The notes beneath the pieces were generated by a model. It worked only from the letters and a program-made list of their open reading frames with translations. It had not been told where the DNA came from and did no database searches. A stretch of 64,000 bases of DNA, taken from NCBI RefSeq assembly GCF_963853765.1, contig NC_088860.1, forward strand, positions 14,384,001-14,448,000, given 5' to 3'. This document shows positions 17,086 to 38,045 of this stretch, piece after piece; position 1 is the stretch's first letter, and every line of letters begins with the position of its first letter. Source of the DNA: Magallana gigas. Its lineage: Eukaryota. The position numbers and the translations under genes are program-made.

Positions 17086-17854
17086 CTAACCAGAGTTGTT
17101 GTTGTTCAACAAGATTGGTGTGAGAGCCAAGAGACCTTCAAATGATAATATCGAATGATGAATTATACAATAAATAGATCCAACAAATGGACAGATATTA
17201 CCAGGAGATGGAAAAATTGATAACTGTCCGCAAATATCCTTAGTAACATATTTACTTGTTTTGGAATTGTGTTTAAACATACAGCTAAAAAAAAACTAGT
17301 ATACGTGATTGCAATTCCGTTCTTGATAGTCCTTTTCTTAGTTTCTCAATTTGTATATATTAAGCGGAAAATGAATAAACATTTTATCAAAACATACCCA
17401 AAAGCAGAGCACCGTTTCCTCCAAAGATTCCCTGGTTTGTGGTTTCAGCTCCAACACCCAGACCAAGGGCTGGGAGGGGGAGTGGCTGCTGGACGGGTGC
17501 TTCCACTGGGACTGGGTAAGGGACGTAGACGGATTTCATGGATTTCTTGTGACCATATCCGGATGTACCGTGCCCATATCCGGATGAACCATGTCCGTAT
17601 CCGGATAAACCTTGTCCGTATCCGGACATACCCTGTCCATATCCGCTGATTCCGGTGCTGTATCCATACCCGCTGTCATATCCTCCTGCATATCCTCCAG
17701 TATATCCACTTGTGTATCCACTTTGGTCGTATCCACTTGCGTATCCGCTTGTGTACCCTGATTGATCGTATCCACCGCTGGAATAACCCATGTCGGCACG
17801 GACGAGGGCAACACCGAGAACTAAGAGAGCGGCGACAACGGCTGAGGAATGCAT
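17086..17854 (-). CDS. Secreted Gly/Tyr/Ser-rich low-complexity protein, paralog A (168 aa; shematrin/prisilkin-like composition)
   Basis: Coding exons 17854-17398 and 17135-17086, joined by a phase-1 GT-AG intron. Signal peptide MHSSAVVAALLVLGVALVRA, SGY/GYG repeats, GHKKS hinge, VYVPYPVPV linker, tail GIFGGNGALLLGLLALTPILLNNNNSG*. Non-coding exon 1 ends at 18112; 3' UTR intron 17044-16936; AATAAA at 16868-16863. Confidence 0.88.
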
Positions 17855-18111
17855 CTGTTAAAAAAAAAACCCGGATTTTTTACATTGTATGAACTCAACT
17901 GTTCAGTATATTAAACGTTTTTGTAATTTCGAGGAAATCAAATCTAAATATGCATGAACGACGTATTTCCTTTTTTTTAAGTGGAAACAAAAAAGAAATT
18001 AACTAGAGTTTGCCTAAATTAGCTTAGACATGCAGAATAAAATATCTGTTCTTTAAAAAAAATACATAGAAAAAACGGTTGCTTAGTCCCTTGACTAGGG
18101 ATGTCAATTAC

Positions 18112-18260
18112 CTTGGAAGATCTGTTGGTAGTGATTTGAATCTGATCTAAGCACCTTTTTATACCAAAGAGTGAATGGCGCCTACAGCGGTTACGGTTTT
18201 GCGCGCAACAGCCACACCAACAGTTGTTACTTTGGGCCATGTTGTGTCTACCTGACGTAA
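18112..18260 (-). promoter_or_regulatory. Core promoter and non-coding exon 1 of paralog A
   Basis: TATAAAAA at 18163-18156, donor AAG|GTAATT at 18112/18111, TTACGTCA (sense) at 18260-18253. Confidence 0.7.
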
Positions 18261-18303
18261 TGCGCATGCTCTTAACAAGGAAGTTGATAATATACGTAAG
18301 TTT

Positions 18304-18747
18304 ATTATAGCATTGAATCATGATTTTTTGAAGTATACACTCTCATAACTGCAGCGGTGTGTGCATACAAATTGAGTAACGCGCGTTAGCGCGTTATGAA
18401 AATTTGTATGCACACACCGCTGCAGTTATGAGAGTGTATACTTCAAAAAATCATGATTTAATGCTTATATTTACATTTTTTTTAACTTCTTGCCTTGTCT
18501 GCAAATGTGATTCATACCTTAAAATTCCTATCTTATCCTAAGGGTAAGTTAATATTAATGGAAGAGCCACAGTAACAGCCATAAGCGTGAACTTTGATTT
18601 TCGCTTGTGACGTTGCAGTTTACAGCGTTCAACGTTTGTGACGTCATAATAAAACTCGTCAATTTGACCTTTGACTACTTGTTGCATTTAGAGGCATTTA
18701 AACATCACGGAATTTAATGGAAAAACACAGTAGAATGTAAATATATG
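18304..18747. mobile_element. Foldback Helentron-type insertion in the paralog A promoter, absent from paralog B
   Basis: Near-perfect ~160-bp hairpin (CATGATTTTTTGAAGTATACAC...GTGTATACTTCAAAAAATCATG) and an ATATTTAC/GTAAATAT inverted pair. The duplicated unit has the empty site at ~21750. Confidence 0.85.
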
Positions 18748-35117: not shown

Positions 35118-35325
35118 CTCCTTTATAAGGCCCAACACCAATTTCCGAGGAAAATTGCTACTCAGATCATTTAGTGGTTTTCTGAAATTTTGACCCTTTC
35201 ATATTTTACCCATTTTTCTACTCCTTTATAAGGCTCAACAACAATTTCTGGGGAAAATTGCTAGTCAGATCATTTAGTGGTTTTTCTGAAATTTTGACCC
35301 AATCATATTTCACCCATTTTTCATG
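35118..35325. repeat. Two-copy ~103-bp tandem repeat
   Basis: CTCCTTTATAAGGC...GGAAAATTGCTA.TCAGATCATTTAGTGG...CTGAAATTTTGACCC occurs twice in tandem. Confidence 0.8.
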
Positions 35326-37126
35326 TTTTTACAGCTTTATTGGACCTTTCCCAGCTAATTTCCTGCACCTGTACCACATGCATGGCGTACCTTTACATAT
35401 CAAGAACTTACCGGTGTGTTATTTACTACCAGTTTGTCCCATCCACATACTTTTCGTGTAACTTTACCTCCTTCATTTCACTGTGTAAAGTCAACCAAAT
35501 AGATAAACCCACAGGTTTAGCATCTTGCTTCTGATTGTCATGTACTTAATATTAGGGGTCTATACATAGTGCATACAAATTTTCATGAACAGACATCCCT
35601 TTAACTATAGCTACAGGTCTGTAGCTCCCTGTCTGAAAAAATTCGGATGGACAACCTGGGAGCCCGTTGAAAAAAGTGTATATTTATTGCTAAAAATCTG
35701 CGCTATGTTTGGACTTATTAACTTTACTTATACGCACATTCTGTGAAAACAATTAGTACCATTAAATTCTTCATGCAATTTACTACTGTTATATCATCTC
35801 TTCACTTGACTTCAATCAACATTGTATTACATATTAGGAATTAATTTATGTTTTCTAATTAGAGAAAATATAGTTACTAAAAACGTCATTTATGAATATT
35901 TACATTTTCAAGTGTCTTTGACTAGATTTTGTAATGTACAGTCCAATACACCAATGCCTATTTTGATATTTAATTGTTTTGCTGAAAATTATATGAATTA
36001 ACGAGGAAAACAAGTAGATGTAATTAAAAAAATCCTTCTTTGAATATTATGGGCCAGTGGGGTGATTAAATACCATTTAGTAAGATCGGTGCGATCAAAT
36101 ACATGTAGGTCATAAAGGCCTTCGGGCTTTATTTGATTTTGTATTACTTAGCTAATTTACTCAAAGAATAATGTAATATTTTTTAAATATTCTCGATTGC
36201 AGTAAGGAAAATAAGTTTTTATTGATTTATCAATACTTCATTTTTATTAAATATGTTTATTGGTATCAAAACCGAACCTTCAGTACCCTTTCCTTAAAAT
36301 GAGTTGCTAGTAAGTATATATAACATATTAATAAATATCGCTAAAACAGTGGGGAAAATCTGTGCACATTATGAATACATAAATACTAGTATATAATATT
36401 CCATAAAACTTATAACATTCGTTACACGTAAAAATTAGAGATAATATGATAAAGATATCTTTTACCATGCATAACAGAAAAAGAAAACGATTACAAAACA
36501 TCAGGGCTGTTGACTTGTTTGTGGGTGCGCAAAAACAGTATTAAAACTGAAAATCAAATGAAAAATGAAAATCAACTTTTAATAAAAGTTGTTTTCATTA
36601 CAACTTTGATTTTTATTTTATCATTACTTGAAAATATTTATGAACACACACACACACACGCAAGCACGCACAAAATACTTGCAGTTGTTATTAGAATTTA
36701 GTTTACTGTTTTTGTTGATGATTTATACAGTAAGAAATAAAAGCTTTTGTCAACAAGACATAGAAAGAAGACAAACAGAGATAAGATTAATTTATAGACA
36801 GATAATGAAGTAATGAAAGTTTTGAATAAGAAAGGGTTAATTAATATACACTATGATTATATGTCATGAAAAAATACACATTTGAATAAACAAAACTTAT
36901 TTCATCAATCCTAATTGAATCTCAAATATATTATGTATTAAATTCAATGACCTGATCGCGGCTACAATTTAGACACATTTTTGGATCAAGGTATATTTTA
37001 CAAATCAGTTGATCGAATGGCAATTGCGGAACACTTTGATCAAACCCGATTTTGGACATGGGTAGGAGAGTCGGCAGTCTAGACATTACATGTTCTTCGC
37101 GCGCACCTTCCTTATACCAGGATGTC

Positions 37127-37227
37127 TTACGCCATGTTGTTACGCAATTTACTTCTGGGGATCTACTATAAGAAGGGTGGCGCAGCAATGAATGGCAGTG
37201 CAGTCCAACAGACCTACAGATCGAAAG
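37127..37227 (+). promoter_or_regulatory. Core promoter and non-coding exon 1 of paralog E
   Basis: TTACGCCA at 37127-37134, TTACGCAA at 37140-37147, TATAAGAA at 37167-37174, donor AAG|GTAAGC at 37227/37228. Confidence 0.72.
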
Positions 37228-37464
37228 GTAAGCTTCCACAGAGTAAGCTCACTCTTCATTCACAGTCAATTTTCTTTACAAATATCAGGCCATTTTTATG
37301 TTCCATTGCTATAATCCTGTGGTATATTTGCGTATTTCCTGCTATAAGTCGTGTTTGAGGCAGCTTCACGTTAGCTCTAGTTTCTTATATTATTCATATT
37401 CTTGGTCAATTTATACCGGTAGAACAAGAAAAGATTTTAAATGTCACATTTTGCTGTATTACAG

Positions 37465-38045
37465 ATGCGTTCATTCATCACCATTGCTGTCGTTATGATG
37501 GCCGGCGTTGCCGTGGCCATGGCTGAGGGATACGGTTCCAGCGGATACGGAAGTAGCAGCTACGGAAGTAGCGGTTACGGCTACATGTCTTATCCCACAT
37601 CTGGATCTTACGGATATGGAGGTGGATACGGAAGTGGATATGGATACGGATCTAGCGGATACGAAAGCGGGTACGGAAGCGGATACGGGAGCGGATATGG
37701 AAGTGGATACGGAAAGGGACACGGAAAGAAATCATCCACCCATGTGTATTACCCAGTCCCTGTGCCCGTCCAACAGCCAACCCCTACTCCCCTTCCCCTT
37801 CCACCAATCGGTCTTGGAGCTGGCATCGACGCCGGAAACAACGGTCTGTTCGGAGGCAGCGGCATTGGACTTCTTAGTAAGTAGATTATCAACATGTCAT
37901 CCATGCGTTTATTCTGACTTATATGCTTGCATTAATTCCCTGCATTTAGCAATTAAAGCATCAATTTCAAAATGTTTAATTATCTTTTTCAGTGCTGCTT
38001 TTCCTGATCCCTCTCCTTTTCAACAACAACAATACTTCCGGTTAA
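37465..38045 (+). CDS. Secreted Gly/Tyr/Ser-rich (GSGY-repeat) protein, paralog E (154 aa)
   Basis: Coding exons 37465-37876 and 37993-38045 (phase 1). Close paralog of D with the same tail ([28 protein letters not shown]). AATAAA near 38163. Confidence 0.9.

What the first reader, a model, noticed from the sequence alone, without database searches (positions are those of the whole stretch)
17086..38045. Hidden conserved C-terminal exon: hydrophobic segment plus poly-Asn-(T)SG, missed by the ORF track
Seen in sequence: in all five genes a phase-1 intron interrupts the hydrophobic segment at the same place, and a 50-56-nt exon completes it: ..GALLLG|LLALTPILL-NNNNSG*, ..GSGLL|LLLFLLPLLL-NNNNNTSG*, ..GIGLL|[17 protein letters not shown]. 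This tail is among the most conserved parts of the family despite divergent N-termini. It gives ~15-17 uncharged residues with a Pro, no flanking basic residues, and a polar Asn run. Inference: it could be a membrane anchor, an atypical GPI-type signal, or a hydrophobic/Asn self-assembly tag that sorts these proteins into secretory granules or fibres.
Basis: partly seen in the sequence, partly recalled or inferred. Interest (0 to 1): 0.72.

Follow-up and report, generated by a model that had tools for sequence, protein, structure and literature searches.

The report
Oyster shell-field proteins' conserved anchor exon
Five neighbouring Pacific-oyster genes for small, disordered glycine/tyrosine-rich secreted proteins (two are known markers of the embryonic shell-forming field) all end in a real, spliced, conserved mini-exon that completes a short greasy segment plus an uncharged Asn-rich end, most likely a signal that tethers the protein to the cell surface.

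Summary
All five genes (17086-38045) have a GT..AG phase-1 intron at the same codon. In each, a terminal exon with 50-56 coding bases completes a 13-14-residue hydrophobic core followed by NNNN(N)(T)SG-stop.

- **Splicing:** RNA-derived contigs show exactly the predicted junctions for genes 3 and 4.
- **Existing annotation:** RefSeq models of genes 1 and 2, and of Ostrea, Saccostrea and C. virginica orthologues, already contain the exon. "Hidden" therefore reflects only the intron-blind ORF track.
- **Family size:** a sixth paralogue lies 3.7 Mb away. An exhaustive profile search found relatives only among oyster-like sequences.
- **Conservation:** the tail exon is the best-conserved region (63% mean pairwise identity against 33% in the repeats). 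Pooled pN is 0.26 and pS is 0.66.
- **What varies:** the poly-Asn run is not invariant, since Saccostrea has QNTATSG and NGNLNLSG. The constants are core length, a proline, no charged residue and a terminal [S/T]-Gly.
- **Expression:** genes 1 and 2 are published shell-field markers in gastrulae.

Function is inferred, not shown. My reading is a C-terminal membrane tether, GPI-type (about 0.4) or a minimal transmembrane anchor (about 0.3). One RNA-labelled run shows an unspliced contig, so a soluble intron-retaining isoform cannot be excluded.

The parts
17398..17854 (-). Gene 1 (LOC105342064) main coding exon: signal peptide, Gly/Tyr/His repeats, basic patch, Pro-rich module, hinge and first half of the hydrophobic core. 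It ends in a phase-1 donor G|GTATGT.
   Evidence: identical to RefSeq XP_034327157
17086..17135 (-). Gene 1 tail exon, coding part: (G)LLALTPILLNNNNSG then stop.
   Evidence: present in the RefSeq model P0006
18112..18267 (-). Gene 1 5' exon, spliced AAG|GTAATT ... AACAG|ATG. RefSeq starts translation here, adding 52 residues in front of the signal peptide. This is probably 5' UTR.
   Evidence: the extension is not conserved in the C. virginica model P0009
20841..21297 (-). Gene 2 (LOC117689669) main coding exon, a near copy of gene 1.
20531..20580 (-). Gene 2 tail exon, coding part: (G)LLALTPILLNNNNSG then stop.
27253..27646 (-). Gene 3 main coding exon. This is the acidic Asp/Phe and GSMG variant.
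   Evidence: the junction at 27253 is seen in RNA contigs
26905..26996 (-). Gene 3 tail exon. The coding part is 26996-26941, (L)LLFLLPLLLNNNNNTSG then stop, followed by 36 nt of 3' UTR up to a 3'-UTR intron at 26904-26601.
   Evidence: (joints 27253 to 26996 and 26905 to 26600)
29760..29843 (+). Gene 4 5'-UTR exon. Its 3' end is at about 29841-29843 and its start was not determined. It is spliced to the acceptor directly before the ATG at 30254.
   Evidence: (joint 29841 to 30252, GT..AG, cut +2)
30254..30662 (+). Gene 4 main coding exon.
   Evidence: junction seen in RNA contigs
30783..30835 (+). Gene 4 tail exon, coding part: (M)[16 protein letters not shown] then stop. The exon continues to a poly(A) signal near 30962.
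   Evidence: (joint 30662 to 30783, depth 24.9)
37465..37876 (+). Gene 5 main coding exon.
37993..38045 (+). Gene 5 tail exon, coding part: (M)[16 protein letters not shown] then stop.

Best explanation
The window carries five tandem paralogues of an oyster-restricted gene family, with a sixth copy elsewhere on the chromosome.

Each protein has the same layout:
- an N-terminal signal peptide;
- a disordered Gly/Tyr/Ser (His- or Asp-rich) low-complexity region;
- a small basic patch;
- a Pro-rich module (VYxPxPVPV...PLPLP);
- a Gly-rich hinge (N-x-G-[ILV]-[FL]-G-G-[NS]-G);
- a 13-14-residue Leu-rich core containing one Pro;
- 6-8 uncharged residues ending in [S/T]-Gly.

A conserved phase-1 intron splits the hydrophobic core, and the terminal exon supplies its second half and the polar end.

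Most likely mechanism (inferred, not shown). The signal peptide takes the protein into the ER. The C-terminal segment is too short and too weakly hydrophobic for an ordinary plasma-membrane helix and has no flanking charge. It is therefore read as a GPI-attachment-type signal. Cleavage would fall at the N/D of the N/D-x-G triplet, 6-7 residues upstream of the core, with transfer to a GPI lipid. The Gly/Tyr-rich chain would then be displayed on the apical surface of shell-field or mantle epithelial cells on a proline-rich stalk. From there it could be cross-linked or released into the first organic shell layer.

Shown here: the exon, its splicing, its conservation, purifying selection on it, and shell-field expression of genes 1 and 2. 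Inferred: membrane tethering (about 0.65-0.7 overall) and the GPI route specifically (about 0.4).
For: - **Gene structure and splicing:**
- **Same intron position and tail in other oysters:** Ostrea edulis, Saccostrea echinata (two paralogue types), an unnamed oyster on metagenome contigs and a roughly 84%-identical Crassostrea species. C. virginica and S. cucullata RefSeq proteins also end this way.
- **Conservation:** the tail exon is the most conserved region (0.63 against 0.33-0.54 elsewhere). Pooled pS is 0.66 and pN is 0.26. Mg_g3 against its congener orthologue has 4 synonymous and 0 non-synonymous changes.
- **Core and tail properties:** the core is always 13-14 residues, with zero charged residues after it. 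A canonical small-residue triplet (N/D-x-G) with a 6-7-residue spacer occurs in 10 of 12 sequences.
- **Hydrophobicity:** the additive Hessa-scale estimate for the best 19-mer is -0.3 to +2.6 kcal/mol, which is marginal.
- **Structure prediction:** AlphaFold2 gives only two helices, residues 4-20 (signal peptide) and 100-114 (the core). The rest is disordered, with mean pLDDT 54.
- **Expression:** g1 (XP_034327157) and g2 (XP_034327156) are top markers of shell-field clusters in C. gigas gastrulae. The g1 transcript was localised to the dorsal shell field by HCR (PMC12551290).
- **Background knowledge:** for a protein with a signal peptide and a hydrophobic stretch this close to its end, the hydrophobic stretch is still inside the ribosome at termination. 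This is the situation of GPI-signal proteins.
Against: - No GPI or TM predictor could be run, and no biochemical data exist.
- Classical GPI signals usually end with the hydrophobic stretch. Here 6-8 polar residues follow it and are themselves conserved, with invariant terminal [S/T]-Gly and the Gly codon always GGT. A cleaved and discarded signal does not explain that conservation.
- The g3 clade in Magallana/Crassostrea has Q at the proposed cleavage position and no canonical triplet.
- In a Gly/Asn/Ser-rich hinge, small-residue triplets arise easily, so their presence is weak evidence.
- The Kyte-Doolittle 19-residue mean of 1.8-2.3 is within the range of real TM helices.
- Run X1, recorded as RNA, has a g4 contig that runs straight through the intron at depth 24.5. 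The tail may therefore not always be made.
Confidence: 0.4

Rival explanations
1. Minimal type-I transmembrane anchor. The hydrophobic core, perhaps with part of the Gly-rich hinge, spans the membrane as a short helix. The uncharged Asn-rich end ...[S/T]-Gly stays in the cytosol as a 6-8-residue tail, perhaps as a sorting or retention motif. The ectodomain may later be shed.
For: - AlphaFold2 models residues 100-114 as a helix.
- The Kyte-Doolittle 19-mer mean is 1.8-2.3. For g4, g5 and the Ostrea orthologue the Hessa-type sum is slightly negative.
- Conservation of the extreme C-terminus, including invariant [S/T]-Gly, is easier to explain if the tail survives in the mature protein.
Against: - The core is only 13-14 residues and contains a Pro.
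- The best 19-mer is unfavourable (+1.2 to +2.6) in 8 of 12 sequences.
- There is no positive charge on the would-be cytosolic side in any of 12 sequences, which runs against the usual stop-transfer pattern.
- The segment lies too close to the C-terminus for co-translational stop-transfer (general knowledge).
Confidence: 0.3
2. Not a membrane anchor. The tail is fully translocated and kept on the secreted protein as a hydrophobic/Asn self-association or granule-sorting tag. The invariant C-terminal Gly could be converted to an amide by peptidylglycine amidating enzyme. The tail would then drive micelle-like or coacervate assembly of the Gly/Tyr-rich chains.
For: - All 14 tails seen end in Gly preceded by Ser or Thr. 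The Ser codons come from both codon families, while the Gly codon is always GGT.
- The segment is only marginally hydrophobic.
- The proteins are disordered and low-complexity, of the kind that phase-separates (general knowledge of squid-beak and mussel proteins).
Against: - An exposed Leu-rich 14-mer in the ER lumen would normally be captured by the membrane, the GPI transamidase or quality control.
- The Asn run is not conserved in Saccostrea, which weakens a poly-Asn zipper idea.
- There is no precedent known to me, and no data.
Confidence: 0.15
3. Isoform switch. Retention of the last intron is used in some tissues or stages to make a tail-less, freely soluble form ending ...LLSK, ...LLCK or ...LGMF. 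Splicing makes the tethered form. This could coexist with any of the readings above.
For: - Run X1, recorded as RNA, has a 615-nt contig at depth 24.5 that runs unspliced from 30427 to 30952. Neighbouring intergenic DNA is covered at only 2-6.
- With the intron retained, a stop follows within 2-4 codons in the five window genes (5 in the sixth copy, g6).
Against: - X1 also covers intergenic sequence, so genomic DNA or pre-mRNA is present in it. It is also 1-5% diverged from the window.
- X2 shows only the spliced path, at similar depth.
- Quick stops after GTAAGT in AT-rich introns are expected by chance.
- All the "unspliced" database proteins proved to be ORFs on genomic contigs of other oysters, not RNA.
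Confidence: 0.15

Closest known systems
GPI-attachment signals of metazoan surface proteins (for example placental alkaline phosphatase, whose signal also ends in a few polar residues; from my own knowledge)
   Same: N-terminal signal peptide, a small-residue triplet, a spacer of about 6 residues, a short (13-14 aa) hydrophobic stretch near the very C-terminus, and no charged cytosolic tail.
   Different: The 6-8-residue polar end is long for a GPI signal and is itself conserved, with invariant [S/T]-Gly. The whole segment is the best-conserved part of the protein, whereas GPI signals usually conserve only physico-chemical character. One paralogue clade lacks a canonical cleavage triplet.
Acetylcholinesterase H, T and R isoforms (from my own knowledge): a terminal exon encodes the GPI signal, and read-through of the preceding intron gives a soluble form
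   Same: The anchor signal is carried by a separate small 3' exon. Retaining the intron would give a truncated soluble protein.
   Different: Here the intron cuts through the hydrophobic core itself. Alternative use is only hinted at by one run. There is no sequence relationship.
ZP-domain apical-matrix proteins (egg coat, uromodulin, tectorins, cuticlins; from my own knowledge), which need a C-terminal TM or GPI tether for correct extracellular assembly
   Same: The idea that a matrix protein is first held on the secreting cell's apical membrane and then built into an extracellular layer. The tissue context is also shared: an epithelium that lays down an apical matrix.
   Different: No ZP or any other Pfam domain is present. 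These proteins are disordered low-complexity chains, and no furin-type site lies next to the anchor.
Pinctada shematrins and prisilkin-39, the names RefSeq gives to g1 and g2
   Same: Secreted Gly/Tyr/Ser-rich low-complexity proteins expressed by shell-forming epithelium.
   Different: The resemblance is compositional. The conserved C-terminal half (Pro-rich module, hinge and tail) found only oyster-like relatives among 1.84 billion representatives. Shematrins end in a basic RKKKY-type motif (my knowledge), not in a hydrophobic tail.

Membership tests
GPI-attachment signal | N-terminal cleavable signal peptide | tested here: inconclusive
   A hydrophobic N-terminus with an A-x-A type end is present in all members, and AF2 models a helix at residues 4-20. 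No SignalP run was possible. RefSeq models of g1 and g2 start 52 residues upstream.
GPI-attachment signal | Small residues at omega and omega+2, followed by a spacer of about 5-10 residues | tested here: inconclusive
   An N/D-x-G triplet with a 6-7-residue spacer occurs in 10 of 12 sequences. It is absent from Mg_g3 and its congener orthologue. Such triplets arise easily by chance in a Gly/Asn-rich hinge.
GPI-attachment signal | Short C-terminal hydrophobic stretch (about 8-20 residues) | tested here: met
   The core is 13-14 residues in all 12 sequences.
GPI-attachment signal | Hydrophobic stretch runs to, or nearly to, the C-terminus, with no hydrophilic tail | tested here: inconclusive
   Six to eight uncharged polar residues follow the core. 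This is at or beyond the upper edge of known examples.
GPI-attachment signal | Release by PI-PLC, or lipid-anchor chemistry | not testable with these tools
   This needs a bench experiment.
Single-pass type-I transmembrane anchor | Hydrophobic helix long enough to span a bilayer (about 18-23 residues) with favourable insertion energy | tested here: not met
   The core is 13-14 residues with a Pro. The KD mean of 1.8-2.3 keeps this from being decisive.
Single-pass type-I transmembrane anchor | Positively charged residues on the cytosolic flank | tested here: not met
   There are zero K, R or H residues (and no D or E) after the core in 12 of 12 sequences.
Shematrin / prisilkin-39 family (the RefSeq names) | Detectable homology outside the low-complexity repeats | tested here: not met
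   A profile of the C-terminal 68 positions searched against 1.84 billion representatives gave 11 hits. All were oyster-like family members or giant low-complexity proteins. There was no Pfam family. Reference Pinctada sequences were not compared directly.

The most novel reading that the evidence does not exclude
The conserved uncharged end (Asn/Thr/Ser-rich, invariant [S/T]-Gly, Gly always GGT) together with the 14-residue Pro-containing core may be a lineage-specific processing or sorting signal rather than a generic anchor. One example would be a tether that is recognised and cleaved, or transferred onto the nascent chitin/protein pellicle. Another would be a C-terminally amidated lipid-like handle. 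Either could nucleate the first organic shell layer directly on the shell-field cell membrane, with intron retention giving a soluble partner form.
Probability: 0.12. Interest if true: 0.75.

Novelty: new variant of a known kind. Interest (0 to 1): 0.42.

Why it matters
How the very first shell layer is started on the embryonic shell field is poorly understood. Gly/Tyr-rich "shematrin-like" proteins are normally treated as freely secreted framework proteins. If this oyster family is instead held on the apical membrane by a dedicated, strongly conserved anchor exon, that gives a concrete and testable way for cells to template the organic pellicle at their own surface.

There is also an annotation point. 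The RefSeq start codons of g1 and g2 bury the signal peptide. No M. gigas protein model for g3, g4 or g5 turned up in two of the homology searches. Automated secretome or GPI screens may therefore have missed the family.

Tried and rejected
1. **Looser genome-wide pattern** (Leu + 3 Asn + 3-9 nt + Gly + stop): 162 hits against 160 in the reversed control. This is pure chance level and says nothing about other tail-bearing genes.
2. **"Unspliced" database proteins ending ...LLCK...LLGK or ...LLCKSI.** I suspected intron-retaining transcripts. The contigs proved to be genomic DNA of other oysters, collinear with the window at about 84% identity, and each has the tail exon downstream.
3. **A divergent relative (P0023/P0058, from an ENA assembly).** It could have shown what the tail looks like at greater distance. 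No DNA was served and a further protein search found only the query itself.
4. **Pfam and ESM Atlas:** no family, and no hit above chance.
5. **Raw poly(A) runs X21 and X22:** no reads on the genes at 1-in-100 sampling, so there are no junction or intron counts.
6. **The loose end of the X1 contig at 30952.** It is not a splice to anything in the window, so it does not show that X1's unspliced contig is mature RNA.
7. **A conserved N-glycosylation sequon in the tail.** It is present in most tails (NNS, NNT, NTT, NLS) but absent from Saccostrea QNTATSG, so I rejected it as a defining feature.
8. **Literature searches** for GPI- or TM-anchored Gly/Tyr-rich shell proteins found nothing on this tail.
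Full report
**What is there**

The window is AT-rich eukaryotic DNA (GC about 0.32). It lies at C8:14384001-14448000 of a 564-Mb genome. That genome is the Pacific oyster: the RefSeq protein XP_034327157 "prisilkin-39 / shematrin-like protein 2 [Magallana gigas]" contains the gene 1 product residue for residue, tail included.

The intron-blind ORF list shows five related ORFs of 133-161 aa. Each has a signal-peptide-like start and Gly/Tyr/Ser repeats. In gene 3 an acidic Asp/Phe block and GSMG repeats replace part of the repeats. 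The ORFs stop at ...LGMF...LGML...LLCK...LLSK and ...LLSK.

**Checking the observation**

Splicing in silico gives one canonical donor and one frame-keeping acceptor per gene. All introns are phase 1, at the same codon, and 116-262 nt long. The coding parts of the tail exons are 50-56 nt. The quoted peptides are exact.

RNA-derived contigs of run X2 carry the junctions 30662 to 30783 (gene 4, depth 24.9) and 27253 to 26996 (gene 3). They also carry a 5'-UTR intron of gene 4 (29841 to 30252) and a 3'-UTR intron of gene 3 (26905 to 26600). Contigs that lack four GT..AG introns can only come from spliced RNA.

For genes 1 and 2 the RefSeq models use the same junction.

**Family and conservation**

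The genome holds a sixth copy at C8:10.67 Mb with the same intron and the tail (F)[16 protein letters not shown]. A strict DNA pattern for the tail hits nine places genome-wide. Six are this family, and the reversed control gives two.

The same intron position and tail were found in these other oysters:

| Source | Tail or note |
|---|---|
| Ostrea edulis | intron of 616 nt, tail ...[15 protein letters not shown] |
| Saccostrea echinata, g1 type | ...LLALTPFLLNGNLNLSG |
| Saccostrea echinata, g3 type | ...LLVLLPLLLQNTATSG |
| S. cucullata | ...QNTATTTG |
| C. virginica | identical to g1 |
| Unnamed oyster on metagenome contigs | tail exon present |
| A roughly 84%-identical Crassostrea species | contigs collinear with the window |

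A profile of the C-terminal 68 positions, run exhaustively against 1.84 billion representatives, found only these proteins plus a few giant low-complexity proteins. There is no Pfam family. The family therefore appears confined to oysters.

Mean pairwise identity over nine non-redundant members, by region:

| Region | Identity |
|---|---|
| Signal peptide | 0.49 |
| Repeats | 0.33 |
| Basic + Pro-rich module | 0.51 |
| Hinge | 0.54 |
| Tail exon | 0.63 |

In the tail codons pooled pS is 0.66 against pN 0.26. The closest orthologue pair has 4 synonymous and 0 non-synonymous changes. The peptide is what selection preserves, not the DNA.

The poly-Asn run itself is not invariant, as the Saccostrea tails show. 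Four features are constant:
- a 13-14-residue Leu-rich core with one Pro;
- no charged residue after it;
- a 6-8-residue Asn/Thr/Ser-rich end;
- a terminal [S/T]-Gly, with the Gly codon always GGT.

**What the genes are**

A 2025 single-cell study of C. gigas embryos lists LOC105342064 (XP_034327157.1, gene 1) and LOC117689669 (XP_034327156.1, gene 2) among the top markers of shell-field clusters in gastrulae. The same study used LOC105342064 as its in-situ (HCR) marker of the dorsal shell field (PMC12551290). It does not mention the tail, and no other paper found does either.

AlphaFold2 on a seven-sequence alignment gives a low-confidence model (mean pLDDT 54). It has only two helices, the signal peptide (residues 4-20) and the hydrophobic core (100-114), and everything between is coil.

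**How it most likely works**

The protein enters the ER through its signal peptide. The hydrophobic core sits 6-8 residues from the end, so it is still inside the ribosome when translation stops. This is the situation of GPI-signal proteins (general knowledge).

Four sequence properties bear on the mechanism:
- The core is short, at 13-14 residues.
- An additive Hessa-type estimate for the best 19-mer is -0.3 to +2.6 kcal/mol, which is marginal. The Kyte-Doolittle mean is 1.8-2.3.
- No basic residue flanks the core.
- In 10 of 12 sequences an N/D-x-G triplet lies 6-7 residues upstream.

This fits a GPI-attachment-type signal better than an ordinary stop-transfer anchor. I put GPI at about 0.4, a minimal TM anchor at about 0.3, and a non-membrane assembly or sorting tag (possibly amidated at the invariant terminal Gly) at about 0.15.

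Against GPI:
- the polar end is long and itself conserved;
- the gene 3 clade lacks a canonical triplet;
- such triplets are easy to find in a Gly/Asn-rich hinge.

None of this could be settled without predictors or experiments.

**A caveat on splicing**

Run X1, recorded as RNA and 1-5% diverged from the window, has a gene 4 contig that runs unspliced through the intron at depth 24.5. Intergenic DNA in the same run is covered at 2-6. This could be genomic DNA, pre-mRNA, or a real intron-retaining, tail-less isoform. I could not resolve it.

The many "unspliced" proteins in the database are ORFs on genomic contigs, not transcripts.

**Verdict**

"Hidden" is an artefact of the ORF track, at least for genes 1 and 2. 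In the two homology searches that should have reached them, no M. gigas protein model for genes 3-5 appeared, so those tails may be unannotated.

The feature is a variant of a known kind, a C-terminal tethering signal, on a lineage-specific shell-field protein family. It has an unusual conserved polar end that deserves a direct test.

Noticed in passing
window 18112-18267 (-) and the equivalent upstream of gene 2 (ORF 21452-21715): RefSeq models of g1 and g2 begin at an ATG in the 5' exon, which is spliced in frame to the ATG at 17854. This adds about 52 Cys/Arg-rich residues in front of the signal peptide. The C. virginica model has a different, unrelated extension, and the Ostrea and Saccostrea models start at M-[HR]-S. 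The extension is therefore probably translated 5' UTR, and it hides the signal peptide from automated predictors.
   Followed up: partly
window 26601-26904 (-): Gene 3 has a 304-nt intron in its 3' UTR, starting 36 nt after the stop codon. It was seen as a GT..AG joint in an RNA contig of run X2.
   Followed up: partly
window 30427-30952 (+), run X1: A 615-nt contig from an RNA-labelled run retains the gene 4 intron at depth 24.5. The same run covers intergenic DNA at 2-6. It could be an intron-retaining isoform, pre-mRNA or DNA.
   Followed up: partly
G000:C8:10666782-10667529 (L006: exon 1321-1765, tail 2016-2068): A sixth family member lies 3.7 Mb from the cluster on the same chromosome. 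It has the same phase-1 intron and the tail (F)[16 protein letters not shown].
   Followed up: yes
last sense codon of all tail exons (for example window 17089-17091, 30830-30832): The terminal Gly codon is GGT in all 11 tail exons with DNA in hand, although the neighbouring Leu, Pro and Ser codons vary freely. This may reflect stop-codon context or some nucleotide-level constraint. It is unexplained.
   Followed up: no
window 17269-17649 (+), 20706-21305 (+), 30260-30524 (-), 37471-37722 (-): Long ORFs antisense to, or out of frame with, the Gly/Tyr repeats are by-products of the repeat composition. They are not genes.
   Followed up: no
all family members, between the repeats and the Pro-rich module (for example g4 ...[10 protein letters not shown]...): A conserved small basic patch (KK, HKK, KR or GKSGK) sits about 45 residues upstream of the hydrophobic core. 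It could be a dibasic processing site that frees the Gly/Tyr-rich part from a tethered Pro-rich stalk. This is pure inference.
   Followed up: no
window 2341-2823 (+): A 160-aa ORF looks like a fragment of a reverse transcriptase from a non-LTR retrotransposon. This is judged by eye from the translation and was not searched.
   Followed up: no
window 30908-30930 and 38108-38122 (+): A short (GGTCT)n microsatellite sits in the 3' UTRs of genes 4 and 5. The read laying filter skipped 30902-30935 as a repeat.
   Followed up: no
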